Source of the DNA: Ramazzottius varieornatus
Taxonomy: Eukaryota; Animalia; Tardigrada
Reading direction: 5' to 3'
NCBI GenBank assembly: GCA_001949185.1
Contig: BDGG01000010.1
Span: forward strand, 1,559,773-1,623,772
DNA length: 64,000 nucleotides
Below the pieces are notes generated by a model that was given only the letters and a program-made list of their open reading frames with translations, had not been told where the DNA came from and did no database searches. This document shows, piece by piece, positions 16,587 to 32,562 of this stretch. How positions within the stretch are numbered: the first letter of the stretch is position 1; each line of letters opens with the position of its first letter. Both the position numbers and the translations under genes were made by a program.

Positions 16587-19500
16587 ATGAAATGGATTAT
16601 CGGTAAGTTCCCCGTTTTTTTAGAAGAAGTCGAGTTGAAGATGTCAGTTGAAGATGCCAAACATTCTGGGCAGTATCATACCAGAACGGCGACAGAAAAC
16701 TGAGCCTCGAATGTGGCAATAACATACATTTTCGTAAATAGCACGCGTGTTGTGTCAGTTCTGTATGATGGCGACGTGATTGACAATCCAACATCGCTTC
16801 TTATTAATATTTCGGCTCTTAATATTCTATTCAAATATTTATCTGTGTGTAGAACGGCGCTTAATCGATCAAAAGAAGATTTCAATATTGAGTACCGCAG
16901 TACGTAAACCAGCCAGCGTGGGCTCCCACATCCTTTTACACACAACTGTTCTAAACAAACGCAGTTCGGTTTTATTACTGCGCAAGTCCGTTTTCTAAAG
17001 TTGGTTCAGCTGAAAATATTATCCCGATAATAAGGATATCGACATCGTGCCAGACGTAGTCGGGAGAGTTTTCGCTGTTGATTGGGTTGTTTTGGTGTCA
17101 CAGATTTCCTCATCGCGGTTCTTCTGAACAGCACTCCAACATCGCATGTCTCCGCTCACGTTGTCCTAACCTATCCACCTGCTCGGAAATACGCGTTGGA
17201 CTTCTTGGACAATGTACACAGTCCGGAGCCTTGCGGAATGCCAAAAGGTTCGTACCGATCGGAAATGTGTTACAGTTATGAGTCGCTCTTATGACATAGA
17301 GAAACTGTGCAAAGAAGTCAGAATGTCTAAGTAGTGGAGTCTAGTAAGATGTCTGAAGGCATACTTTCTTCTTTTTTCTCGCTGCGTGAGTCACTGCAAA
17401 ACGAAACTATTTTTGCGTTATTTTATCGGTCAGAATACCGGTGCGACTGCTTAACATTATCATGAATTATGTAATGTGTTGTTTTTTGGCAGGTCTCAGC
17501 GAACCTACTTTCTTACAAGTCGGCTCAGAAATCGAAGTCACGTGGCATTCAGCATATCCAGACGAGGTGATTTTGACGAAAAAAATTAGTCTGTTTGCTC
17601 ACGAACTCGACGGTTAATCTGTTTACCCACGAAAACTTCCCTGTGCCCCAGTCACAGGAAATGCCGGCAAATACCACACACTAGTGCAACACTCAGGTGC
17701 AGAATCCTTTACTGATAGGATACTAGAAAGAGCGTAAGCAGGTTTATGAGATGGGTTTGCCGGTTTTCCGCACCGATTGATTTTTGACTTTGTTGTTGAT
17801 TCGAGGTTTGATTGTGGTGTTTGTTCCTGACAGGGCGGATATGCTATTGAGCTTTTGGATGAGAACTACGACAGAGTATCGCAGCTCTTTCCCGTACTTG
17901 CCGGCAGAGAGCCCCGCACATCAGTATCGTTCGAGAATATATGGCCCAATACCACTTCTCAAACGATAACATTACCAAAGAATGTTAGCTGTGACAAGTG
18001 TACCCTTCGGATAACTCGCCAAGCTCGTCAATGGGAAAATGTTAGCCGGGAGCTGGAAGGCTACGTCTTCCGCAGTTGCGCGGATGTGAACATTGTGGAC
18101 CAAGGTGCGTAAAGTGAAAACGTCTGCCGAGATAATTAGGGCACGCGCGAGTAGTCAAGGGTGCTCCAGCTACGCAGCCGTGTCCAGTCACCCGACAAAC
18201 AAGCGAGCATCACCTGAGCTGTGGGTCTAGCCGGTCGATCATTAACGCACCATCCATGTTGATTTCTTGCCCTTCGTCATATGTCACTCACTTTTTCCTT
18301 CGATTGCTAAACGTCGGTTGTCTCTCTTGCAGTGGATAATTCTCAAAAGTGCTCTAGTCATGGCTCCTGGACCGTGCAACAAAAGTGCAACTGTGATGAC
18401 CTATACACTGGCAATGTCTGCCAGTACAAAGGTGTGAAAGTTATCAAGGTTTTATGCAGCAAATATGAAGCAATAAAATACTCGAAACATTTTATAGGCG
18501 AGCCGAAAAAGCAATGACGAAATCGTAATCCGTTTATTCTTCAGAAATATGTCTCAAAGAAGCCGACTGTAACTTCCGGGGTAAATGTATCGATTCCGGC
18601 TCGAATTCGCATCCCAAGAAGCGATGCAACTGTCTTCCGGGTTGGCAAGGCAGGAACTGCAGTCGCGGTAAGCCGTCTTTGTTTGGACCCAGCACACCAC
18701 GATGCAGTACCATGATATCAACGTCAAAAATTGTTTTGTTGCTCATCTCTTGTTCAACAGAGTCATTCTTGAAGACCAAAGTGTTCAACAAAGCCTTATT
18801 CACACACTACAAGCTGGCTGATGGATTCGATCTCTACTGGAAAATCGACAAGAACCTCGCCGAAATTGAATTCGCAGTCCAGTCCAAGTCTTCCTCATGG
18901 ATCGCTATAGGGTGGAGACCGCTCAGTAAGTACCAACCCATCGTCCCGCAACTTGTAAACTTTAGGAGAGGTTCAGGATAGGTTATTTTTCCAGCTTTAA
19001 CCGGAGAGTGTCGGCAGCAGTTCCCGAAGCTCGCCAACGAAACATACTCTCCACACGGAGCCTCGTTACTTGCGAAGGAGCTGACCATGGACGACAGTGA
19101 ATTCGAAGCAATTAGGCCAAGGAGCGGTAAGGTCTCTGAGGAGCTGGACGAGCCACTCGCCATTCGTCCCCGACGCGAGGTTATGGCTGTCCCACAAAAC
19201 GTAACACTACTTGACCCGGCTGTTCTCTTCAACAATGCCTCTGAAGGTTAGCTCAAAATCCTTTCTAAGACTCCTTAACACAATTCAGTTTCGAGGTGCA
19301 GTATATCGAGCACTGTTTGTTTCAGAACTTCATCCAATGGACTGTACAGATATCGTGATCGGGTTCGCCAGGAATGGTTTCGGTCAAGTGCAGGACTCTT
19401 ACACCAGAGACCGGTCTACGCCACAGGACGACTCTTTCTACGGAGGAATGGACAACCTTATAGGATCCATCGCATTCGAAGAGGACGGTGTTACGATCAT

Positions 19501-22500
19501 GCGCTTCAAGAGAGCTTTAGCCGGTGCGACTCTTTCCTTGATACTTTTAGAATAAGACGTGGGCTCATGTTTCGTTTGTTCCTCTTCAGCGGTTGATCCG
19601 GCGGACCATTCGTTTTTGAACAGTCCGATGCACGTGATATTTGCTCGCGGACAAGAGAAGGGTAGTTTCCATCACTATCCACCGTTGAGCATGGAAGCGG
19701 ACAATAAGTCCTTGACTGAGTTCTACAAACCCGATGATTTACGCTACCACGGTGCCGGTGCTAATAACAGGGGCGTTGCTTTAATCAACTTTTTCGACGA
19801 GAAGAACGAACTGGCGACGCTTCAGTCACCTTGTGTGGGAGAGTGGAAGGCTCCACTGAACTGTGTGGGCGTTGCTTGTCAGTACAAAGCGCGATGGTAA
19901 GTACATTTTTTAACAGATTTCTCACAGACTTTTGATCAGAAATAAAAAACGGTAATATTGTAATTTGATCTCCAACTAATCACTTCATGGAGAGAATTTC
20001 CGATAAAAGCGCGGGCCGAGGTGTCAAAATCTCGTCTCCCAAGCGTGGTGCCCCCCTTAACAAATATATGAGGGGTCTGAGCTCTCAGCGTGGCCTTGTA
20101 CAGGGCCTCAAAAATTCTGGTCTCCCACGGGGAGACGAGTCTGCTGGTCGTGCCCGCGCTGCCAATCAAACGTAATAATTTTCTAATAATATTCTGTGTG
20201 TTTCAGGGAGTTTCTGGAGGACTCGGACTCTATTTACTTCAATATTCAGGCAAAAGCAAAAGACCGATGGATCGGAATTGGGTTTAACGGGGAAGAGAAT
20301 CACATGGTAATGGTCAAAGAAAATCAATTCAGAGAAAAATATACACAGCCCGCCAAGGTTTTAGTTTTCTTGTCTGTTTACAGCCAGGTTCGGACATAAT
20401 CATTGGCTGGGTGGACGATGACGGAAGAGTTCAGCTTACTGACAGGCACGCTGATGGACACCGAACACCCATACTCGACAAGAAGCAAGATCTACAGAAC
20501 ATCGCCGGAAGCGTCGACAGTAACTTCATGACCATCGAGTTTACGAGACTACGCGTGGTAAGCAATAATCTTTAGGAAGAGCGAAGACCATTTCCCTGCA
20601 AAGAGAAACAATTTAACGTTTTTTCCTGTAGACAAATGACACGAACGACTTCCAGTTTCACGATGAAAAATGTGCCTTCTTCCTGTTTCCGGTCAACGGT
20701 GGGAAATTTGACAAATATTCAGGTAAGTCAGCGACAACGCTTTCCGCCGAAGTTCGACCATAATTGTGACTGACGCGGAAAATTTATTGTCTTTCGTAGG
20801 CGTTATGAGTAAGCATGAGTTCATCCCCACGGTTCTACCGAACAAAGTATGCGTGCAAAGTTGCCGGGTTAATGGTACGTCCATCGGTGGTTCCCCAGCC
20901 GCGCTTTTACACGATGCAGCTTCAGAGGTTCCCTCTGCCGGTAAGAGCTGTGCAACGTCACGAAACTGCAGAATTTTAGCCTTGCTTACCGCTCTCTGTA
21001 CTTGCTCGTTCCATTCAAGATTTTCCTAGCTTACTTCCGTAACGTGGCCTTAGGAGGCGTTGGTGATGCAATTATTCCGTGTCCTTCTTGTACTTAATAA
21101 TGTTCCCCTCGTATCTTTACGGCTCTTGTGCATACGATATCCACCTTTTGTACTGTGAACCACACTCACTAACAGTAAACGCACAATTTCTGGTGGCTGT
21201 GTTTTCTTCTGGTGACGGGTTCTCCATTCTTACTATATCAATTACTAACCGCTGGAAGGGCTTCCTTTTTCTTCTTCTTCTTCTTCTTCTTCTTCTTCTT
21301 CTTCTTCTTCTTCTGTGGAACTTCGCGATATTTTTTTACCATGCCAGCCTTTCCTAAGACCGGAAACGTCACATTTGGTAAATTTCAGAATTGGAAAACT
21401 CCAGTTTGATAGTGCCACAGGATCGAGCTGATGGGGAAGCGCTAGTCGTAATCAACACTACGGCGACTACTGTAGCAACATCAGTCTCCTCATCAACCTT
21501 GGCTACGACCACGAGTCTAACAAGCATCGCCACAACACCTTCCGGTCTGTCCAATTTACCCGGTCCTTCCATCCAACTGCCGCCGGCTGTCAAACGGTTT
21601 TTGTCCCGAGGAAACTCCTATCCGGTATCACCTACCTCCACCACGTCAAGTCCACCCATCAAGTCTCCTCCCGCCACCACTCAAGGGGACATCACAACTT
21701 CATCGACAGTCACAGCCGCCGTTCCGGTCTCTACGTCGGCAGCTTCAACAACTTCCTGGATGACCTTACCATCCACGACTACACTGCCTACCACAAAATT
21801 CTCCTCTACACTAGCCTTTCTCGACATCGCTACCACCAGCGCCATCACCACCACGACGACCGCTCCATCAACCACTCAGTCAACCAGAATCATTTTCTTC
21901 GGTCCAGCAGCCTCAACAGCGCCCGCGAAAGGTCCGATAGCCCTATCAACAACCACCACGACTCCCGTTACCTCCACGGCAAGAACGTTAATCGTGGCGA
22001 CAACAACTTCGACCGGGAGACCGATCGTTACGCAAAACTTATCCGTTACAATGCCCACTGTGACCACCCCACCGACGACTGGAGCTCCTTCGGTAACGGG
22101 CATTTCCAACTCGGAACCGGGCGGGAACTGGACGCAGTGCTATGGCCAGTGGCGCTTCCCCCCAGATTGCGTAAGTACCACCTTTTCTTTCGATTGGTCG
22201 ACAGTATTTACCGTTCTTGATTTTCGCTTACAGACACCGGCGAACTGTGAATATGTGATTATGTGGGAGTACGAGCCTAGCGCCGATGACATTCATTTCT
22301 ACATTCGTAGTAGTCATCCCGACCGGTGGACAGGTGTCGGGTTCTCTCCTAATGCGGCAATGGTACACTTGGCATATTCCTTTGTTTTGAGCTGTTCATT
22401 GATTCAAGTCTTCCTTTCAGCCTCATTCCGATGTGATATTTGGGTTCGTGACACCGGACGGTAACGTTACCATAACAGACGGGACCACCGAAGGTCACTA

Positions 22501-25500
22501 TCCTCCCATCAAGTCCAGCCCGTCCATGTTGACTAACATTGCTGGGCGTGTGAAGGATGGGAAAGTAGAGCTGTCTTTTACTCGTCCGCGAGGCTTCGAC
22601 ATCAACCGATATGCCATGTTCGGTGTGCGAGAGCAAGACTGCCCTCACTTTCTCTTCCCCGTCGAAGGTACTTGCATGAAAGGCCCGAATGTCCGTCTTT
22701 ACTTTCTAAGCGTTTTCCTTTCTAATCCAGGTGGACCGTTTGACTCAACAACTGGTTTCATACTGAAACATGCCAAGACCCCCAAGATCAGTCGTCATCG
22801 TATCTGCGTCAAGCAGTGCTCCGCAGAAGACCCGCCGGCACCTTTCACCCTACCACGGCTGTCCGAGCCTATCGCTGCCCCACTAACAGCTCCGACAACG
22901 CCACCTAGTGTGCTGACCACGACACAGTCCACCACGACGACGACCGAAGAAGAAACCACCACCACACAGCTGCCGGTGATTGAAGGCACACCATGCCGAG
23001 CCATCTTCTCTTTCCCCAGAGATTGCAACACTTCCACCTGTGTCTATGTAGCACAATGGGATTACCTACCCCCCACCGACGAAATCAACTTTGTCATTCA
23101 GTCCAACCGGCTGAACACGTGGACTGGTATTGGCTTCTCGGACAGTGGTGAAATGCCGTACTCGGATATGGCTATAGGGTGGGTGAACGGCGATGGTCGT
23201 CCAACCATCAGCGATCGGTGGAGTACGACGTATGCTGAACCACAGCGGGACTTTCAACAAGACTTGACGCACCTTGGAGGGACCCTTCGATACGGCACAC
23301 AGGTAAGACCAGACTTCTGGCGTTGATTTACTTCAATGCCACGGCTCCTTAATTTGACTACGCCTTAGAATGTTTTTTTTCTTCTTCCAGATCGTGACTT
23401 TCACCCGGAAGCGACAAACTGGTGATGAACGAGACTACCAGTTTTCCGACACGTCCTGCCCGTACCTGATCTTTCCGGTCTTCGGAGGTACATACGATGA
23501 CGCCAGCGAGATCATCGACAAGCACGAGGTTACTCCAGTAGTCTCCGATCAACGTATCTGTATTCGTGCATGTCGCCAACGAACAACCCTTCCGCCTTCG
23601 CTAGACAGCTCTGCTGCTGTCCTTGCCAATAGTTCCTCTCCGGTACTGTCCACTTTCGATCAGAAGCTCCTCGTGATCAACCCGGCTCAGTTGACCGAAG
23701 CCGGCATGACACCTCCACCAACCACGACTCGACGTCCAACTGGAGCATTCAGCAATGCCGGTAGCACCAAGACCGGACTGGTCATTTCCAGTGTGGCGCT
23801 TGATGGTTCGAAGACGCAAAGTCCTTCCAGCGCTAGTCTAACTTACCGAAAGAAGTCTCTTCAGCCAAACAGCACCATCAGTATCGGTTCTTCAAGTCCA
23901 GCGACTAGCTTCGTGACGACCACGACAGCACTTCCGTCGCCCGAAGAAATGCTACGTGTCATGCTCCTTCAGGCAGGGTTGAACAATGTCGCTGTGCAGA
24001 TACCAGCTAACGACCAACCTCCTCGATTCGTCACTGCTATGACACCACTTCCGGGTAACGCCTCGTCTCGCGCCACTGCGAATGCCGGTGGTGCTTCGAC
24101 TACTTTCGGTGTCACAAAATCAGGCATTGAGTTCGTAGTAACCTATCCAGCTACCACCGTTGCTTCTAGAAGTGACATCCCGCAAGGTAACAGGCTAGGC
24201 TCCGTACCGGAAAACAATAATAGCCAGAACAGTAGCGCCTTACTCGGGAGCTCCGCACAAGCCTCAAAGCCTTCCGGCAGCTCTGCAGTCGATGAGGCAA
24301 TGAGCCAGGCACAGCTTCTAGCACTGGCCGGTATGGTCATCGGCAACTCGACGTTACTACCACCGAACCTGACGCCGCCGCCAGGGTCCGTTCAGATCGG
24401 TGTAGTCTTGAGTTCTCCACCTGACGTGAGACAAGAGAGCGATATAAGCGTTCTCTCGAGTGGAAACAGCCCCATTGAGCCTATCGTCAATCAAAATACC
24501 CGCGTGAAGAGCTCGGAGACGGTGGTGACGGGCTTCAACCTCGGTCAAACTCCGACAGCCGGAGAACTGCTGGTTCGTGCCAAAAGCCAGAACCCGAGCA
24601 TTGGCCCCCTACCAGCTGCTTCGGGATCCCCACCTCCAGCTATCTCGATGACACCTGAACAAATGCTCCAAGCGCTTTTAAAGGAGTCCGGCATGGGAGA
24701 AGTAAAGGTGGAGGGTGTGGATACCTCACCTGCTGCCAATTCTAAAGAGCCATCTGCCCCTGTTTCTGGACGAATTCGCAATAACGGTAAGTGCCTATCG
24801 GCCTTTTGTGGAAAGACAATGCTTGGAAACCCGAAAAAATAATCTACCCAGATAAGTCTCTAACCAGAAAATCAACAAAATATACGTAGCAAAATGTGCG
24901 GGAAATATGCTGATGTTTATCAGTGCAGTGCAGTGCAGACAAAATCCAAAGGGTAAAAAGTAAAACCATCCTGTGTGTTGTCGAGCAAGGTCTATAGAAT
25001 GAACATAAAGTTATTTACTTTTTTGGCAGCTCCGCTAAGAGACAGACACGACACGGTACCCGCTGCGCCTACTCGATACGGTGCGGAAAAACAGCGCTCG
25101 CGTCTGGGTGGATCTTCAGGCTCACTGGGTGCATCGGGCTCAGCCCCAGTGCCCTCCATCGTTCGGTTCTCCACAGCCCTTCCACCTGTTCAACAGAAGG
25201 CGGAAGTCTTCATCAGTGCCGCCTCGGACAGAGTGTCAAGTCCATCTGGACCTGCTCCTGCTGCACAGGCGTCTGGTTTAGTAGCTTTGGCTAATGACCA
25301 AGGTACCATCGGCGATAATGAAGACTGCGGAGGGATATTCAAGTACCCGTCTGGCTGCATCAAAGAGGCCTGTGCCTACGTTGCCACATGGCGACCTGGA
25401 AGTAGCGTAGACGAAATAGAGTTCTCTATCGAAACTGACCGTCCAGATTTGTGGTCGGCCATTGGATTCTCAGACGACAAACTGATGGTAGAGAATCTCT

Positions 25501-28500
25501 AGATTTGATGCGTAAAAGTGGCAATTTATTTTCATGGTCGGCTTTTTCCGAATTTACAGAAAGGATCGGATATCATCTACGGTTTTATCCGAACCAACGG
25601 CATGCCGCGCTTGGTTGAAGCTTTCGCGGCTGACTACATGGCTCCAGTTCGTGACTTCCGGAATGAGATCCGAGTCATTGACGGTGGTCGCACAGGAAAC
25701 CGAGCTTTCTTCCACTTCGCTCGAAAGCTGACCACGCGTAACCCGAATAACTTTGACTTCGGAAATGGTCGCTGTCCGTTCTTCAAGTTCCCTGTCCTGG
25801 GTGGCTCATTCGACCCGAACACTCTGATGATCGACAAACACCAGCGTACTCCGATAGTCAGTCCAACGCGGATATGCCTCAAGTCCTGCACCGCACCACG
25901 AGTAACCAAACCACCAGGCAAGGTGCTCATGGTACCTCCGACAGTTCCTTCCGTAGTGCGACCTGTTCAAGAGCCAGTGGGCTCTGGCAGTGTGGAGAGA
26001 CCTGTGGTGACGTCGGCGTCTGCGAAGAACGCGTCGAGTAATTCTTCTCCGGATGGGAGTGTGCTGAGCTGTGTCGGTGAATTCCGGTTCCCAGATGGGT
26101 GTACGCCTTCCACATGTGAATATGTGGCGCAGTGGGAGTATGTCGGACCCACTGACGAGATAAAGTTCAACGTCATATCCTCTCGGCCTGATGAATGGAC
26201 AGGTACAGTAACTCGACCTATTGTGTTAACAAAGTACAACCGTCTGTCACGTACTTACATACAGCCCGAGGCGGCCAAGTGACTACCACCTACATACAAG
26301 ATTAGAGAATTCTCGACAGGGTTTTTGCGCAAATTCGAAACTGATCTTCTTTGGTCTAAAATTCTTTTCTAACCTCCTAAAAAATAACTGGTTAGAAATC
26401 TGCCCAGTGGACGTCGAAATCGGCGTGAAACCGGGCATGGTGAACAGTGGAAACCGCCAACAACTTTTGTAGTTTTCGGAGTCCATTTCCAAAATTTATT
26501 TCTGAGTTTGCAGTTGACAGTCTGCGGTGATCTTATTTGAAACAAATAGAACAAGGACCTGGCCACATTAAGAATGGTCGAAAGCATGAATCTACCGTTT
26601 GAGGCAAGAGCAACAAGTTTTGCCGCAAAGGGGGATTTCCCGGCAAAATGGCCAAATTCAACAGTTTTAATTTTCTTGCCAAGTTAGTGTGGCTATTTTA
26701 TGGTATTATTTGGTTTTAAATTACAAGCTAGATAGTCTCACGTGCGTTAAAATCAAGCTGCGGCTTCATAACCAAACACGGAATTTTAAAAGTAAGGTTT
26801 TGGTCATGGAAAGGTATCTTCCCCACCGGAAGTCATGCCGATCAACTTTCCCAGACTATCTCTCAGCCGATGTGAATCTGCCATATTTCAGTGGAAATAG
26901 CTTGAAAAGTTCTTTGAGATGTGTGGAGGAGCGGACGATAAAACGTAAACTGATTTTTTCATAGCGCTTTGAGCAAGTGGTAGTCACTTGGCCGCCTCAG
27001 GCTGTGCATCCAGCTGTAATTTTCTCATGGAATTTCTGGATGCGTGTGCGCGTGATTTATATCGGGAGCTCTCACATGAGACACTAAAGACAGAAATTTA
27101 GAGTTTCTGCTTCAACTATTCTTCTTCACCTGACCAGCTTTATGCTGTTCCAGGTATCGGATTCAACGACAAGCGACAAATGCCTGGTGCCGATATCTTG
27201 TACGGATGGGTGGACCCAGACACTGCCAAGCCCACACTCGTGGATGCTTCTGCAAGTGCCTACGTCACGCCAACACGAGATCTGAGACAAGATGGCAAGA
27301 ATGTGACGGGAAAACGCCTGGACCAGATCATGTCCTTGTCGTTCACACGGAAGCGCAGCACGAACGACGACAAGGATTACCAGTTCACCGATCAGAAGTG
27401 TCCGTACTTCGTGTTCCCCATCCGTGGTGGAGAGTATGATCCGGGTTCAATGATGATCATGAAGCACAAAAGCACGCCGATGGTTTCGACGTCGAGAGTG
27501 TGTATCACATCTGCCTGCGCTCCAGCAAGTAAGTCTAGGGAGGAGCCCAATCATTTGTTATAACACATTTTCTACTGTAATGAGTGGATATTTTGACATC
27601 CTCTGTTATTTCAAATTTTACTTAATGTTTATTCCTCTTAGCATTACCGCCTCCATCAGCCCTTTCCACACCTCCGCCCAACGATAGCCTTCGAGGCCCG
27701 GTGCTCATGACGGACCTTGCCAACTCCAACGCAACTGCTCGGGAAAGCCCAACGACTACTCTGCCACCTCCACCCAGAACGAAAGCTGTTGTCTTACCAC
27801 CCGATCCATGTAAGATGATACTCCTGTAACTGCCCACTGAAAAATTGTTTCGGGGATAAGGACATGGCAGAATAAATGTGTAGCACTTTGTATTTTCTTC
27901 AGTTTCCTACATGCCATGTGAGGGTCAATGGCGCTACCCAGAGAACTGTGTGGAACCCAACTGTATTTATGTCGCATCATGGAACTACTTGGACGATGCC
28001 GATGCAATTCGCTTTGTCGTCAAAGCTAAGGCGACCGGCTGGACCGGCATCGGATTCAACGACGACATGATGATGGTCAGTGATTCTTCCATAGCCTCCA
28101 GCATGGTTTACTACAGCGTACAGCACACTAGAGACCTTATTGATTACGTTTTGATAGGCCGGTACCGATGCAATCATTGGTTGGGTCACCAGCAAGAACA
28201 CCGTGGTGGTCACGGATCGCCATGCGGAGGGTAACAGTGGCGCCCCTATGGCCGATGAACAGACCGTGTACGATGTGGGTGGTCGTCGCGAAGATGGCTA
28301 TCAGATCATCGAGTTTACAAGAAAGCGGGATACCCAGGACCCTAACGGACAACACTACGTCTTTGGTGACCAAAAGTGTCCGTTCTTCATTTTCCCCGTG
28401 GTCGGTGGCGGATATGACAGTTATGGCGGCATTCAAGCACATAGCCTGAAAGCTAAACCGAAAATTTCGCCGCAACGAATTTGCGTTAGAAGCTGCAATA

Positions 28501-29768
28501 TTGGTGAGTTGGGAAACCATAAATGTAACTGGATAATGCTTCAACTGTAAAGTTTTCTGAACAGATGTTCCACGCCGAATGGTCGTTTCTTTCCGCATTG
28601 TGGATCGATCATGGTCTCCCGAGTTGGAATCAAGACAGACAGCAGCGTTCAAGAAGCTAGAAGCTGAACTTGCAGATCCGCTGGGGAAGCTCTTCGGGAA
28701 CACACCGGGATATCGAGGCAGCCGAGTCATCGCTTTCCGACCCGGAAGTGTGGTAGCTGATGTGGAGATCGCCATCGACCCAACAGCCAATCAGACTTCC
28801 GTAGCTGGAGCTAAGATTATTAAAATGATCCTGATGAATCAAGTACAGCAGAAGCAGCAGATCGGTCTCTTCGCTGTCGACCCGGCTAGCCTTTCGATCT
28901 CAAACGCCGAACGTAGGTCTTGCTGTTCCTTCCATTTGACTGAACTCCGTTCGGCTTGTGAATGGACTCACTATGCTAATGGGGTTTTTATTCGCAGAAA
29001 TTGTATTGAGCTCGGGAACAACAGCTCGTACCGACGTAGTCTCCCAGTCCACGTCGAACAAAGCACCTGAATCCGAAGTGCGGACGTACGCTATCATAGG
29101 TGGCGTTGTTGGTCTTATCGCTATCCTTCTGTTCTTGGCTTTCGGTAAAGTCTGGTACGATCGCAAAGCCCGGCTAGAACGTCGACTTCAACGCGAGGTA
29201 GGGTCTTAAACTCATACGATTGGGTTTCTTCTCAGTCTCTGTGGCAAGTATTTTGAGGTAACTGTGTATATCAATGCAGCAAAAGCCAGGAGTACCTGCT
29301 AGACAGGCGCTGGTCGCCATCGGTCCACCGCAGTATCCACGTCGACAGAGCCGAAGCAGCTCTATTGAACCCGTACGGTCGGAAGGACATGGCCAGAGTC
29401 CATCCATCTTCCCCATGCCGACCGGTATGCGAAATGGGAGCCGACCAGACAGTTCGCTGACAAGAACAAGCTCGGCCAACCCTCCTCCCGACTACTACGA
29501 CAACGACTCCAACGGAAAGGTTTCTCGGAAAACGCGACGCACAGCCATAGCTGACGAACATCCACTCCATCGGCTAAGTACCAACGAAAGTGATCGGACG
29601 TTTACAACTTACAGCAGCGATCAGTCCAGACATATTAACAGGAAGAAGACCCAAGACGCCTTGCAAGAGTGGGATCGAGTCGACGACAGTGACTACAAGC
29701 GACCACCAGACTTTTACTTCATGCCCAGCCAGCGACGCTGGACCCAAGTTCCTCAAACTTTTCAATAA
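16587..29768 (+). CDS. nahoda: Nahoda-like type I membrane protein: signal peptide, LPMO-like His1 domain, 2 EGF, 7 DOMON, Thr/Ser-rich stalks, SEA, TM, cytoplasmic tail (many exons)
   Basis: Exon1 ATGAAATGGATTATCG|gtaag (16587-16602) joins 17104 to give MKWIIDFLIAVLLNSTPTSHVSA|HVVLTYPPARKYALDFLDN; EGF repeats 18333-18667; DOMON WxxIGF..M..SD...G and KH motifs; SEA FRPGSVV at ~28735-28755; TM YAIIGGVVGLIAILLFLAF; ends DFYFMPSQRRWTQVPQTFQ*. Orthology to Drosophila nahoda is from memory of architecture. Confidence 0.85.
20008..20161. mobile_element. ~150-bp GC-rich foldback element in an intron (old hAT-type MITE candidate)
   Basis: agcgcgggc..ctcgtctccc / gggagacgag..gcccgcgct arms; flanks ccgataaa and ccaatcaa (6/8 match) resemble an 8-bp TSD. 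Confidence 0.55.
21271..21314 (+). repeat. (CTT)14 microsatellite, intronic
   Basis: Direct reading. Confidence 0.97.
26262..27004. mobile_element. Non-autonomous Tc1/mariner-type DNA element (~743 bp) in the intron splitting DOMON 6
   Basis: TIRs cagcccgaggcggccaagtgactaccac / gtggtagtcacttggccgcctcaggctg (1 mismatch); flanks TA and TG. Confidence 0.85.
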
Positions 29769-29927: not shown

Positions 29928-32562
29928 CTAAAATTCAGGAAGTATGAAGTTTGTGGACGGCGTAGAAGAAGCGGAGAACCGTGCGTGATTCCCAGGCCGA
30001 TCTGGACCTCGCCGAACCCGTGCATCACCAGTTCGTCCTCTAGAAAGAAGCCACCACTGCAATGCTGACAGAGAGAAAGTGGTGTACAGATTAATTACAT
30101 CTGAGAGCGGAGGTTCTGCTCCGAGTGGGGAACGGTAGGAAGACTGTTGGTTTGCTTGAGCGTGGCCTTCGAAGCACCTAATGGGAGAAAAATCTGACAA
30201 ATGTGCAAGTGAAGTTTTTAACACGGTTGGGTTTCTGAGATATAGGCCTCACGCTGTCTTCTGTCGAGCTGGTCTTCTTTGGGCTCGTACGCATTGGTGA
30301 CCTTGCTGCCACTCGTACGAACTCGAGGTAAGGCATAGTCTGGAGCAAGTTCCCCTCTGTCTTTGAGCATTTTATTCCTAGGAAAAATACGGATTAGTCA
30401 ACTCAGGCAAACAAATTTACCGGCAGTGCAGGTACGAACATGTTAGCTTGAGCCAGTATTTCCAGTCCAGGTGAAACTCCAAACGACGGATCGTACTGCA
30501 TGCAGCTGACAAGTTCCTCGTCCGTCATGTAAACGAGGCGCACACAGTCCATCAGGCGGGCGAGGTGTTTTAATCTTTCCGCCCTTTTGTGGTTTATCCA
30601 GGACATCGCTGCTTCGAACACTTCGAACTCGGACTGTAACAAGACAAGAAGTTATCGCAGCCGCCAAGACATAAAAATTCGACATGTTCGTCTGGTCGAA
30701 AATCGCGGACCGCTGTGACGTATCCAGTCATGACGTCACGAGAAACCAAAACAAAAGAATCTTTCTGATTTCCGATTTTCCATCTTCAGACTCAGAGAGC
30801 CCGGTTATAGGTTACAGTTCAGCTTCCACTCAACCATTGAATAAAAACTGTCTTCTTCAAGAGTTCTGTTCTTGTTGACTTGTTTCTAGGTCTATAGTGT
30901 TCTGGCAAGGACGCGACTCTAGGAACAACAGAGTCAATGGCAAACGGCGGCCATGGAACGAAATAGACGAAGCGCAAACGGCTAAACTGGTAAATGATTA
31001 ACCGAAGTCCGAACCGTGTTGCAGCTCTTATTCTGAACTCTACCGGGATTTTTGGACATATGGCCGTAAGAAGTGCAGTGCTCGGGGACTCACCTTAACA
31101 ATGAGGTGGTCGGAGCTGAGAATCTTGACAACGGTATTCAGGCTCTGTTCCTGGAAGGACGATCTGGAACAGAAGGCTTTAAAATCTTTCGTAAACTTTG
31201 ACCATGCTATCCGTTGCAGATCTTCCACTCCGAGTTCTGTCGCAGCTTGGATTGTCTGGACGATGTTCTGATCCTGTAAAAGCGCAAGAAGCCGACGTAT
31301 AGAAAGAGAATACCAGAACGCGGATTCAGCTGTCCTTACCTCCAGAAGTCGTTCCATGATCTTGTTACATCGCGCCGCAATGACGTAAACTTCCAGTTCC
31401 TTTGCCACATTTAGTATTGAGACCAGGGTTGTTAACTCTATCTATCACAAAGAAGAGCTGCGATGGTTCCAGTCATTGCTCATGACCGTTTTGTTAAGTT
31501 TTGCAGGTATGGAACCAGTACTGGAACATGCTACGTACCTCAAGTTTGGCCATGTACATGAAGTCGACCACGAGGAGAACGGCGCGGGTTTGAAGATCGT
31601 TGCTCAGTGTCACGATGATCGGAAATGTGCTTGTACTGTGAAAGTCTCTGGCTTCTTTTTCGCAGAGACCGGAATGGGCAACGACGACGGCGGAGTGGAC
31701 GGGGATCTGCGTCTCGGCAGTCTTCAGGACGATGTCGCACAAAGCACCGGTCTTCTTCAACCTGATGTACGTCTGGTGGATCCTAAAGAACAGACGGCAA
31801 AGTCAGCAGGTAAGAAGAACAAGTAACGCAGTGAAAATGTGTAGTTCTGTCAAGCAGAAATCACTCTTGCAGAGATAGTGCGAGGATTTGTGGAATGGGG
31901 ACTTATATTTCGGTCTTTCAAGAAAGGGTTGGAATTGGGAAAGAAACCCGGAAGAAAATTGTAAGGAAGGTTTTTGGGGAAGGCTTTGATTTATACGGTA
32001 CTTCATAAGATGCGCCGTCCGGTATCTGCGAAGCAGGTCCTCGAACTCTCTCTGCAGAGTTTTCTTGACGGCCTTCTTGACAATGGTCCCCGCATCCTTC
32101 TTCGTTCGATCAATGCGATAGGCTAGATCGTCTCGAGGATAGTAACTGTCGGCCTGAAAACTGTCGCTTCCCGATTCACTCGATTGTTGAAAGTCTGAAA
32201 CCGGAAGTGTGTGATATTTTTATGTTTGAATAATAGAACACAAACGCCGGGTCATTTATCTTGATATTCCAGCGGAAGTGCTCGCTTTTCTGCTCACCGC
32301 TGTAATCAGAGACCGCAGCTTCCGCTTGACCCGACTCTCGATTTTTTCCCTTTGGTCGCTCTTCTCTCGGCTGAATGGCCGGAGCGGAAACGGTCTGATT
32401 CAGCTCAGTTCTGCCTTGGTTAGCAATAGCGTGACGGGGGTGGTATGTTCGATAGGATAGCTCAGATTGTTGGTCGGGATCGAAAGTTACGCCGTCTGAT
32501 GTTAGCTCAGTAACTTCCGAATCCGAACTGCTCAACAGTCTCGTCTGGTGATTATTAGGCAT
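29928..32562 (-). CDS. BTB/POZ-BACK domain protein without visible kelch repeats (multi-exon; ends approximate)
   Basis: LCDIVLKTAETQIPVHSAVVVAHS (BTB); SEFEVFEAAMSWINHKRAERLKHLARLMDCVRLVYM (BACK); long disordered N-terminus. Confidence 0.8.

What the first reader, a model, noticed from the sequence alone, without database searches (positions are those of the whole stretch)
16587..29768. Candidate one-protein redox system: seven-heme DOMON wire tethering an LPMO-like copper domain to the cell surface
Seen in sequence: the architecture is signal peptide, His1 domain, 2 EGF, 7 DOMON separated partly by mucin-like stalks, SEA, TM, tail. Established: fungal LPMOs are reduced by the DOMON-fold, Met/His-ligated heme-b cytochrome domain of cellobiose dehydrogenase, and some fungal proteins fuse the two. 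Inference: this animal protein joins an LPMO-like metal site to its own chain of cytochrome domains on a membrane stalk. It could carry electrons from a plasma-membrane reductase (e.g. cytochrome b561 type) or from small reductants to act on cuticle or apical matrix polysaccharide, or to handle copper. I know nahoda-like proteins only as DOMON/EGF proteins of unknown function, but I cannot check the literature.
Basis: partly seen in the sequence, partly recalled or inferred. Interest (0 to 1): 0.93.

Follow-up and report, generated by a model that had tools for sequence, protein, structure and literature searches.

The report
Membrane-tethered LPMO-like head on cytochrome-type DOMON array
This animal gene encodes a cell-surface, mucin-like protein whose tip has the fold of a copper-dependent polysaccharide oxidase and whose stalk carries seven probable haem-binding domains, a conserved but unstudied design; in this genome one of the two copper-holding histidines is replaced by aspartate.

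Summary
One + strand, multi-exon gene (16587-29768) encodes a signal peptide, a domain starting with His, two EGFs, seven DOMONs, S/T/P-rich linkers, SEA, one membrane span and a tail.

The head is a real LPMO-fold domain. A profile of relatives hits the Thermobia AA15 structure (E 4.8e-7), with its His91 and Tyr184 aligned to family His and Phe. A model of a relative ranks LPMOs first (Z 8.5).

All seven DOMONs keep a Met and a His. These are the best-conserved non-structural positions in 44 copies from relatives. The Met aligns with the axial Met83 of a fungal cytochrome b domain, and two copies in a relative lost both residues together.

The family spans tardigrades, arthropods, molluscs, annelids, nematomorphs, hemichordates and tunicates. 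All members are unnamed and the head is unannotated.

Three caveats:
- This genome's copy has Asp where 30+ relatives have the second brace His, so a canonical copper site is not intact here.
- Linkers of 55 to about 500 residues mean there is no rigid "wire".
- Haem binding, copper binding, electron transfer and splicing remain untested.

The scan's other notes on this gene cover this same stretch, not other DNA.

The parts
16587..16602 (+). Exon 1: start codon and first five codons of the signal peptide; GTAAGT donor at 16603
   Evidence: Sequence read. No ATG precedes the signal peptide in the next exon's frame.
17104..17247 (+). Exon 2: rest of the signal peptide; His1 codon at 17157-17159 after a Val-Ser-Ala site; start of the LPMO-like head
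   Evidence: This His is invariant in the relatives.
17493..17566 (+). Exon 3 of the head; Asp codon GAC at 17561-17563 sits where relatives have the second brace His
   Evidence: That position aligns with His91 of TdAA15A.
17834..18104 (+). Exon 4: C-terminal half of the head; Phe codon 18068-18070 at the axial position; Gln codon 18029-18031 where relatives have a nearly invariant Glu
18333..18431 (+). EGF-like domain 1
   Evidence: Pfam EGF families, weak. Splice sites. Cys pattern shared with relatives.
18545..18700 (+). EGF-like domain 2; its 3' limit is approximate
   Evidence: Relatives have two EGFs here.
18770..19897 (+). DOMON 1, the long variant with an acidic insert; Met codon 19337, His codon 19748
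   Evidence: Pfam DOMON. The matching Met and His are invariant in 26 relatives.
19829..20850 (+). DOMON 2; Met codon 20304, His codon 20814
21430..22131 (+). Mucin-like linker of 234 residues, 53% Ser/Thr/Pro
22237..22825 (+). DOMON 3; Met codon 22360, His codon 22769
22991..23579 (+). DOMON 4; Met codon 23153, His codon 23523
   Evidence: Pfam DOMON 6.9e-23 and CDH-cyt 1.9e-6. Its Met aligns with the axial Met of 6jt6. HMM coordinates.
23580..25322 (+). Long low-complexity linker of about 500 residues with one intron, 28-34% Ser/Thr/Pro
25323..25892 (+). DOMON 5; Met codon 25485, His codon 25839
26067..27521 (+). DOMON 6, split by an intron of about 950 bases; Met codon 27180, His codon 27465
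27917..28505 (+). DOMON 7; Met codon 28073, His codon 28440
   Evidence: Best match to the last DOMON of P0001.
28585..28857 (+). SEA domain, with a Gly-Ser-Val-Val type self-cleavage motif
   Evidence: Pfam SEA 1.8e-14, above the cut-off. Motif read from the ORF.
29090..29146 (+). Single predicted membrane span
   Evidence: Hydrophobic run in ORF 28958-29209. No predictor was run.
29274..29768 (+). Cytoplasmic tail; the C-terminal motif at about 29703-29744 is shared with arthropod relatives and P0001; stop codon ends at 29768

Best explanation
This is one gene for a type I membrane, mucin-like surface glycoprotein of a conserved bilaterian family. Shown: the tip is a diverged LPMO-fold domain whose nearest solved relative is insect AA15. 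Two EGFs, seven DOMON domains, a SEA domain, one membrane span and a tail with a conserved end motif follow it. Shown by sequence and fold only: the DOMONs are of the cytochrome b kind, with Met and His at the haem-ligand places. Inferred: the DOMONs carry haem b and take electrons from ascorbate-type reductants or from a separate membrane cytochrome b561. They pass electrons by collision along flexible tethers to an acceptor at the tip. In most relatives that acceptor would be a histidine-brace copper. In this genome the second brace His is Asp and a nearly invariant Glu is Gln. Here the head is therefore more likely an altered metal-binding or ligand-binding end piece than a working LPMO. 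The output is more likely metal reduction and hand-over, or matrix redox chemistry, than polysaccharide cleavage.
For: Architecture and single-gene reading; collinear with P0001 and about 30 relatives. Head: a profile of relatives hits 5msz (TdAA15A) at E 4.8e-7, with family His on His91 and family Phe on Tyr184. VIA-align on the model of P0007 gives 5msz Z 8.5, and LPMOs of six families fill ranks 1-15. Pfam LPMO_10 and BIM1-like each match 8 of 26 relatives near the cut-off. Atlas leads point the same way. DOMONs: Pfam DOMON and CDH-cyt. The Met of DOMON 4 aligns with chain residue 65 of 6jt6, which is the axial Met83. Met is kept in 42 of 44 and His in 40 of 44 DOMON copies of relatives, and the two copies without Met also lack His (Fisher p 0.006). 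Met and His of DOMON 1 are invariant in 26 relatives. All seven window copies have both residues. Met-to-His spacing is 93-97 residues, against 99 in CcPDH and 93 in fly CG8399. The fold matches DBH DOMON (Z 13.8), CcPDH cytochrome b (12.1) and CDH cytochrome (11.8). DBH, which binds no haem, has Leu at the Met place. His-to-Asp in the head.
Against: There is no experimental or RNA evidence. Haem and copper binding are untested. The His ligand is placed by position, spacing and co-loss, not by a significant residue-level alignment (one search found nothing). The best structural match of the DOMON is the non-haem DBH domain. Long flexible linkers argue against efficient haem-to-haem transfer. 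The docking test of head against DOMON 1 gave no answer. The head models had only moderate confidence (mean pLDDT 64 and 69). The Asp could be an assembly error or a polymorphism, which I could not check.
Confidence: 0.45

Rival explanations
1. One reading: a self-contained, catalytically active LPMO that cleaves chitin or another apical matrix polysaccharide, with its copper reduced in cis by the DOMON haems.
For: LPMO fold and AA15 relation. His1, the second His and the axial Phe are conserved in relatives. Cytochrome-type DOMONs. AA15 enzymes are needed for cuticle chitin turnover in insects, and no physiological reductant is discussed in that paper. No canonical LPMO_10 match was found elsewhere in this genome.
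Against: In this genome the second brace His is Asp. The two-histidine brace is described as common to all copper-bound LPMOs characterised, and from general knowledge of the enzymes it is needed for catalysis. The family also occurs in hemichordates and tunicates. Pfam scores stay below the LPMO_10 cut-off. No substrate-binding surface was tested.
Confidence: 0.15
2. A non-redox apical matrix organiser or adhesion protein. The DOMONs and the head would bind sugars or chitin, as proposed for Knickkopf-type DOMON proteins, on a mucin stalk with a SEA shedding site.
For: Mucin-like linkers, EGFs, SEA and a single membrane span. DOMON 1 region resembles a CBM9 sugar-binding module at Z 8.2, and the best DOMON match is the non-haem DBH. 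The head lacks a complete brace here.
Against: Met and His are among the most conserved positions and were lost together in two copies. A published comparison reports that this pair is not kept in sugar-binding DOMONs or in DBH.
Confidence: 0.2
3. A haem-binding store, carrier or scavenger at the cell surface, with no electron transfer role.
For: Seven putative haem sites on one shed-able ectodomain.
Against: Six-coordinate Met/His haem b domains of this fold are known as electron carriers (CDH, CcPDH, CYBDOM). The conserved pairing with an LPMO-fold head across phyla is not explained.
Confidence: 0.08
4. Gene-model artefact: the head exons and the DOMON array belong to two genes, or the locus is a pseudogene.
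For: No RNA evidence could be obtained. The exon 3 donor (GTGATT) is weak. A paralogue on another contig is rearranged.
Against: Every junction checked is canonical and phase-compatible. There are no stops in any coding piece. The order of parts is collinear with P0001 and about 30 relatives, including the conserved tail end.
Confidence: 0.05

Closest known systems
AA15 lytic polysaccharide monooxygenases (Thermobia TdAA15A, PDB 5msz; insect LPMO15 groups I-IV)
   Same: Secreted beta-sandwich domain that begins with His after the signal peptide. The second His and the axial aromatic residue of relatives align with His91 and Tyr184. Best structural match. Found in animals.
   Different: Below the Pfam LPMO_10 cut-off. 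The axial residue is Phe, not Tyr. This copy has Asp for the second His. It is fused to EGFs, DOMONs, SEA and a membrane span, an architecture absent from the four described insect groups.
Cellobiose dehydrogenase and CcPDH: AA8 cytochrome b domain that reduces LPMOs
   Same: A DOMON-fold, Met/His haem b domain serves as a mobile electron carrier towards an LPMO copper. The fold matches at Z 11.6-12.1, and the Met aligns with the axial Met.
   Different: There is no flavin or PQQ dehydrogenase domain here. The cytochrome-type domains sit in the same chain as the LPMO-like domain, in up to seven copies, in an animal membrane protein.
CYBDOM proteins (SDR2/FRRS1, fly CG8399, plant CRR/HYP1) and AIR12
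   Same: Extracellular DOMON with a conserved Met/His pair at similar spacing, thought to pass electrons to metal acceptors at the cell surface.
   Different: There is no cytochrome b561 domain in this gene; the b561 genes lie on other contigs. There is a single membrane span, and the electron source is unknown.
Bim1/X325 LPMO-like copper acquisition proteins of fungi
   Same: Surface-anchored, non-cleaving LPMO-fold copper binders. Pfam BIM1-like matches 8 of 26 relatives at about the cut-off and over the whole domain. LaX325 matches at Z 5.7.
   Different: The match is weaker than to AA15. The anchor is a membrane span rather than GPI. The host is an animal. The cytochrome-type domains are added.
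Animal DOMON surface proteins (Knickkopf, Skeletor; Drosophila nahoda)
   Same: Extracellular DOMON proteins of invertebrate epithelia. A 1259-residue Anopheles 'DOMON domain-containing protein' belongs to this family.
   Different: Orthology to nahoda was not tested here. The literature holds only list mentions of nahoda. No source annotates an LPMO-like head.
SEA-containing transmembrane mucins
   Same: Ser/Thr/Pro-rich stalk, membrane-proximal SEA with a Gly-Ser-Val-Val type motif, single span and short tail.
   Different: The ectodomain carries putative redox domains instead of only glycosylated repeats.

Membership tests
LPMO (histidine-brace copper enzymes, AA15-like) | His as the first residue of the mature protein | tested here: met
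   His codon 17157-17159 follows a Val-Ser-Ala cleavage-type site. It is invariant in relatives. The cleavage is predicted by rule only.
LPMO (histidine-brace copper enzymes, AA15-like) | Second brace histidine (His91 of TdAA15A) | tested here: not met
   The window has Asp (GAC, 17561-17563). Relatives have an invariant His that aligns with His91.
LPMO (histidine-brace copper enzymes, AA15-like) | Axial aromatic residue (Tyr184 of TdAA15A; Phe in many AA10) | tested here: met
   Phe codon 18068-18070 aligns with Tyr184.
LPMO (histidine-brace copper enzymes, AA15-like) | Immunoglobulin-like beta-sandwich LPMO fold | tested here: met
   Tested on the model of relative P0007, not on the window protein: 5msz Z 8.5, and ranks 1-15 are LPMOs. 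Model confidence is moderate.
LPMO (histidine-brace copper enzymes, AA15-like) | Score above the Pfam LPMO_10 gathering cut-off | tested here: not met
   No hit on the window exons. Relatives score 19-22 bits against a cut-off of 23.
LPMO (histidine-brace copper enzymes, AA15-like) | Copper binding and oxidative cleavage of a polysaccharide | not testable with these tools
   Needs protein chemistry.
Haem b DOMON / AA8-type cytochrome domain | DOMON beta-sandwich fold | tested here: met
   Pfam DOMON in all seven units. The model of a relative matches CcPDH cytochrome at Z 12.1 and CDH cytochrome at Z 11.8, and also DBH at Z 13.8.
Haem b DOMON / AA8-type cytochrome domain | Axial Met ligand | tested here: met
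   The Met of DOMON 4 aligns with Met83 of CcPDH. Met is present in all seven units and in 42 of 44 copies in relatives.
Haem b DOMON / AA8-type cytochrome domain | Axial His ligand | tested here: inconclusive
   A conserved His lies 93-97 residues after the Met in all units. It is lost together with the Met in two copies. The structural ranges are consistent. There is no significant residue-level alignment to a solved cytochrome.
Haem b DOMON / AA8-type cytochrome domain | Bound haem b with a reversible redox spectrum | not testable with these tools
   Needs expression and spectroscopy.
CYBDOM | Cytochrome b561 membrane domain in the same protein | tested here: not met
   No b561 match in the exons. 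PF03188 matches occur only on other contigs.
Bim1/X325 LPMO-like copper binders | Score above the Pfam BIM1-like cut-off | tested here: inconclusive
   8 of 26 relatives match at E up to 0.01. P0028 scores 26.6 and P0032 27.7 bits against a cut-off of 27. No hit on the window exons.
SEA-domain membrane mucins | SEA domain above the cut-off, next to the membrane span | tested here: met
   54.2 bits against a cut-off of 26.4. The span follows within about 80 codons.

The most novel reading that the evidence does not exclude
Bilaterian animals carry a conserved, membrane-anchored protein in which cytochrome b type DOMON domains reduce an AA15-related histidine-brace copper centre in the same chain. 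This would be an animal counterpart of the fungal CDH-LPMO pair. It would act at the apical surface on chitinous matrix or on copper uptake. The tardigrade copy would show a natural His-to-Asp remodelling of the brace.
Probability: 0.3. Interest if true: 0.85.

Novelty: new variant of a known kind. Interest (0 to 1): 0.62.

Why it matters
How animal LPMOs get their electrons in vivo is not addressed in the insect AA15 paper I read. No animal protein that joins an LPMO-fold domain to cytochrome-type domains appears in the searchable literature. If the family works as proposed, three things follow:
- It would give a ready-made, genetically tractable model (flies, beetles, tardigrades) for extracellular electron supply to a copper site.
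- It would assign a function to a widespread, unnamed gene family.
- It would extend the histidine-brace world to membrane proteins of deuterostome relatives.

The natural His-to-Asp change here offers a built-in test of whether the head needs a true brace.

Tried and rejected
- I then worked by coordinates only.
- **Joined model.** Window searches were made exon by exon by reference, and whole-domain work used natural proteins of relatives.
- **Homologue searches.** The search for homologous proteins with a DOMON exon found nothing. With P0007 it gave only 7 fragments.
- **PDB by sequence.** A four-sequence profile of the DOMON Met-to-His part hit nothing real. P0001 as a whole hit only DBH weakly.
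- **Foldseek on the first head model.** No match at E <= 0.001, although LPMOs recurred with high probability.
- **Complex prediction.** Head against DOMON 1 with haem gave 'no answer': median 0.34 against 0.36 for a control. This counts neither for nor against binding.
- **Alternative exon.** A loose search for a second copy of exon 3 that carries the His found none between 16000 and 18400.
- **Nahoda.** Orthology could not be tested because no fly sequence was at hand.
Full report
**Observation**

The stretch 16587-29768 holds a + strand, multi-exon animal gene. I read it exon by exon. An ATG at 16587 is followed after 16 bases by a GTAAGT donor.

The next exons are 17104-17247, 17493-17566, 17834-18104, 18333-18431, and one starting at 18545. 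Each has a pyrimidine-rich CAG or TAG-type acceptor and a GT donor, and the phases fit from exon to exon. The first two exons give a 23-residue signal peptide that ends Val-Ser-Ala, and the next residue is His (codon 17157-17159).

Pfam on the open pieces finds the following:
- EGF-type matches.
- Seven separate DOMON units, each cut by an intron, mostly just after a conserved Met.
- A SEA domain at 54 bits against a cut-off of 26.

A hydrophobic span (29090-29146) and a 164-residue tail ORF ending at 29768 complete the gene.

The linkers are rich in Ser, Thr and Pro:

| Linker | Length (residues) | Ser/Thr/Pro |
|---|---|---|
| Units 2-3 | 234 | 53% |
| Units 3-4 | 55 | 55% |
| Units 4-5 | about 500 | 28-34% |

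**One gene or two**

The indirect evidence is good. A full scan of protein representatives with the largest head exon found 46 relatives. The best, P0001, has 2184 residues and was predicted from a 6883-base contig. A contig that short cannot hold introns, so I take it for a transcript.

P0001 has the same order of parts: signal peptide, head, two EGFs, seven DOMONs, SEA, membrane span and tail. It is collinear with the window. The last 14 or so residues of the tail are shared with P0001 and with horseshoe crab, scorpion, mite, ostracod, beetle and sandfly proteins.

I did not build or search a joined spliced protein.

**The head**

Pfam finds nothing in the three head exons. The relatives' proteins give near-threshold matches to LPMO_10 (19-22 bits, cut-off 23) and to the BIM1-like copper acquisition domain (26.6-27.7 bits, cut-off 27). 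Each family is matched by 8 of 26 relatives.

A profile of 33 head sequences hits the crystal structure of Thermobia AA15 (5msz) at E 4.8e-7. In that alignment:
- The family's His in the Tyr-Pro-His-(Lys/Arg)-Gly-Gly motif lies on His91.
- The family's Phe just before the Ser-Cys-Ala-Asp motif lies on Tyr184.

The AA15 paper names His1, His91 and Tyr184 as the copper site.

An AlphaFold model of the short relative P0007 reached mean pLDDT 64, with the core at 80-91. Compared with 48,161 PDB representatives, it gave 5msz first (Z 8.5, 126 residues aligned). AA9, AA16, AA11, AA10 and AA13 LPMOs fill ranks 2-15, and the X325 copper binder scores Z 5.7. Foldseek alone was weak. The Atlas gave only leads, all to LPMO-type clusters. 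The head is thus an LPMO-fold domain whose closest solved relative is AA15.

**The broken brace**

In alignments of 26 to 34 relatives from at least eight phyla, His1 is invariant. The second His is invariant in the 26 and kept in all but one garbled sequence of the 34. The window has Asp (GAC, 17561-17563) at the second position.

The flanking splice sites are unambiguous, and a loose search found no alternative exon. A nearly invariant Glu of the relatives is Gln here (18029-18031).

I could not check reads, so an assembly error or a polymorphism (one base, G for C) is not excluded. Taken at face value, this copy fails a defining LPMO feature. I therefore do not file it as an LPMO, though it clearly descends from that fold.

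**The DOMONs**

I built an HMM from the six short-type DOMONs of P0001 and aligned 44 copies from 24 relatives.

- **Conservation.** Apart from Cys, Trp and Gly, the best-conserved columns are a Met (42 of 44) and a His 94 columns later (40 of 44; at least one of the four misses is an alignment slip). The two copies without the Met are exactly two of those without the His, both in P0001 (Fisher p 0.006).
- **DOMON 1.** In the long-type first DOMON, the corresponding Met and His are invariant in 26 relatives.
- **This gene.** All seven units of the window have both residues (codons are listed under parts).
- **Met equivalence.** The Met of unit 4 aligns with chain residue 65 of 6jt6 (E 8e-4). 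That residue is the axial Met83 of the CcPDH cytochrome b domain; its partner is His182, 99 residues on. DBH, which binds no haem, has Leu at that place.
- **Published comparison.** A paper on animal CYBDOM proteins reports the same Met/His pair, 93 apart in fly CG8399. It says the pair is not kept in sugar-binding DOMONs or in DBH.
- **Fold.** A model of the hemichordate relative P0028 (DOMON regions at pLDDT 75-92) matches DBH DOMON at Z 13.8, CcPDH cytochrome b at 12.1, CDH cytochromes at 11.6-11.8 and the haem subunit of ethylbenzene dehydrogenase at 10.9.
- **What is missing.** A significant residue-level alignment for the His could not be obtained.

Haem binding is therefore well motivated but not shown.

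**Distribution and literature**

Named relatives come from tardigrades, a nematomorph, an annelid, molluscs, chelicerates, crustaceans, insects, hemichordates and a tunicate. All are 'uncharacterized' or 'DOMON domain-containing', and none has an annotated head. Copy number of the short DOMON runs from one or two in insects and hemichordates to six or seven in P0001 and an abalone.

Full-text searches found no paper that joins DOMON with LPMO or with the histidine brace; the co-occurrences checked or evident from titles are the Domon-Costello mass spectrometry nomenclature or unrelated DOMON proteins (Knickkopf, amidating enzymes). The described insect LPMO15 groups I-IV have no such architecture. 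Nahoda appears only in gene lists. I could not test whether nahoda is the fly orthologue.

**Genome context**

The assembly has 55.8 Mb in 200 contigs. A paralogue's nearest named relatives are tardigrade proteins. From memory, that size fits a small tardigrade genome; I did not verify the species.

Cytochrome b561 matches lie on three other contigs, none near this gene. No LPMO_10 match was found anywhere in the genome at exon level.

**Mechanism**

- **Shown:** the domain order, the LPMO fold of the head, the DOMON fold, and the conservation and co-loss of Met and His.
- **Inferred:** the DOMONs bind haem b and act as one-electron carriers, as in CDH, CcPDH and CYBDOM proteins. Electrons would enter from ascorbate-like reductants or from a b561 protein in trans, and would leave towards the head.

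The linkers make a rigid wire impossible; transfer would have to go by tethered collision. A docking test of head against DOMON 1 with haem gave no answer and counts neither way.

In full-brace relatives the end acceptor is most simply a brace-bound copper. The output could then be either polysaccharide oxidation or copper reduction and hand-over in the manner of Bim1. Here the gene keeps all fourteen putative haem ligands but has lost a brace His. I therefore favour a metal-handling or ligand-binding head over a working LPMO for this copy.

**Verdict**

It is a new variant of known kinds: an LPMO-fold domain fused in cis to cytochrome-type DOMONs on an animal membrane mucin. Function is unproven. 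The scan's other notes on this gene (s1-792715, s1-792757, s1-792800) cover this same stretch and agree with what I tested.

Noticed in passing
G000 contig C8, about 364700-366600 (L010:2690-4612): A second family member, closer to the Hypsibius protein P0009. Its first exon has Gln where the family has His1. Most of the head and EGF1 were not found. The EGF2/DOMON 1 first half lies inverted relative to the flanking exons, so this is either a rearranged, possibly dead copy or an assembly fault.
   Followed up: partly
whole genome G000: No match to Pfam LPMO_10 at exon level anywhere in the 55.8 Mb assembly. Canonical AA15 genes may therefore be absent from this animal. An exon-wise search can miss them.
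   Followed up: partly
P0001 residues 973-1142 and 1237-1409: Two of the seven DOMONs of this relative have lost both the Met (now Lys) and the His. This is a natural paired loss that supports a joint role for the two residues.
   Followed up: yes
window 29703-29744: The last 14 or so residues of the cytoplasmic tail are conserved with chelicerate, crustacean and insect relatives and with P0001. This suggests a sorting or docking motif of unknown partner.
   Followed up: partly
window 18029-18031: Gln replaces a nearly invariant Glu of the head. This is a second change in the otherwise well-kept head, besides the His-to-Asp change.
   Followed up: no
window 21265-21314 and 16623-16656: A (CTT)x16.7 microsatellite lies in the intron before the first mucin-like exon. 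A 13-base tandem of 2.5 copies lies in intron 1.
   Followed up: no
window 22679-22726: A 48-base in-frame insert inside DOMON 3 has no counterpart in the other units. It may be a very short intron.
   Followed up: no
window 30403-30642, minus strand: This ORF looks by eye like part of a BTB/BACK-type (kelch-family) gene and would be the next gene downstream, on the opposite strand. I ran no search on it.
   Followed up: no
same genome, other pieces (scan notes s1-795398, s1-794297): Earlier notes report a copper monooxygenase with three putatively haem-binding DOMONs and a pair of secreted DOMON-only proteins. This genome may therefore hold several extracellular DOMON cytochrome candidates.
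   Followed up: no
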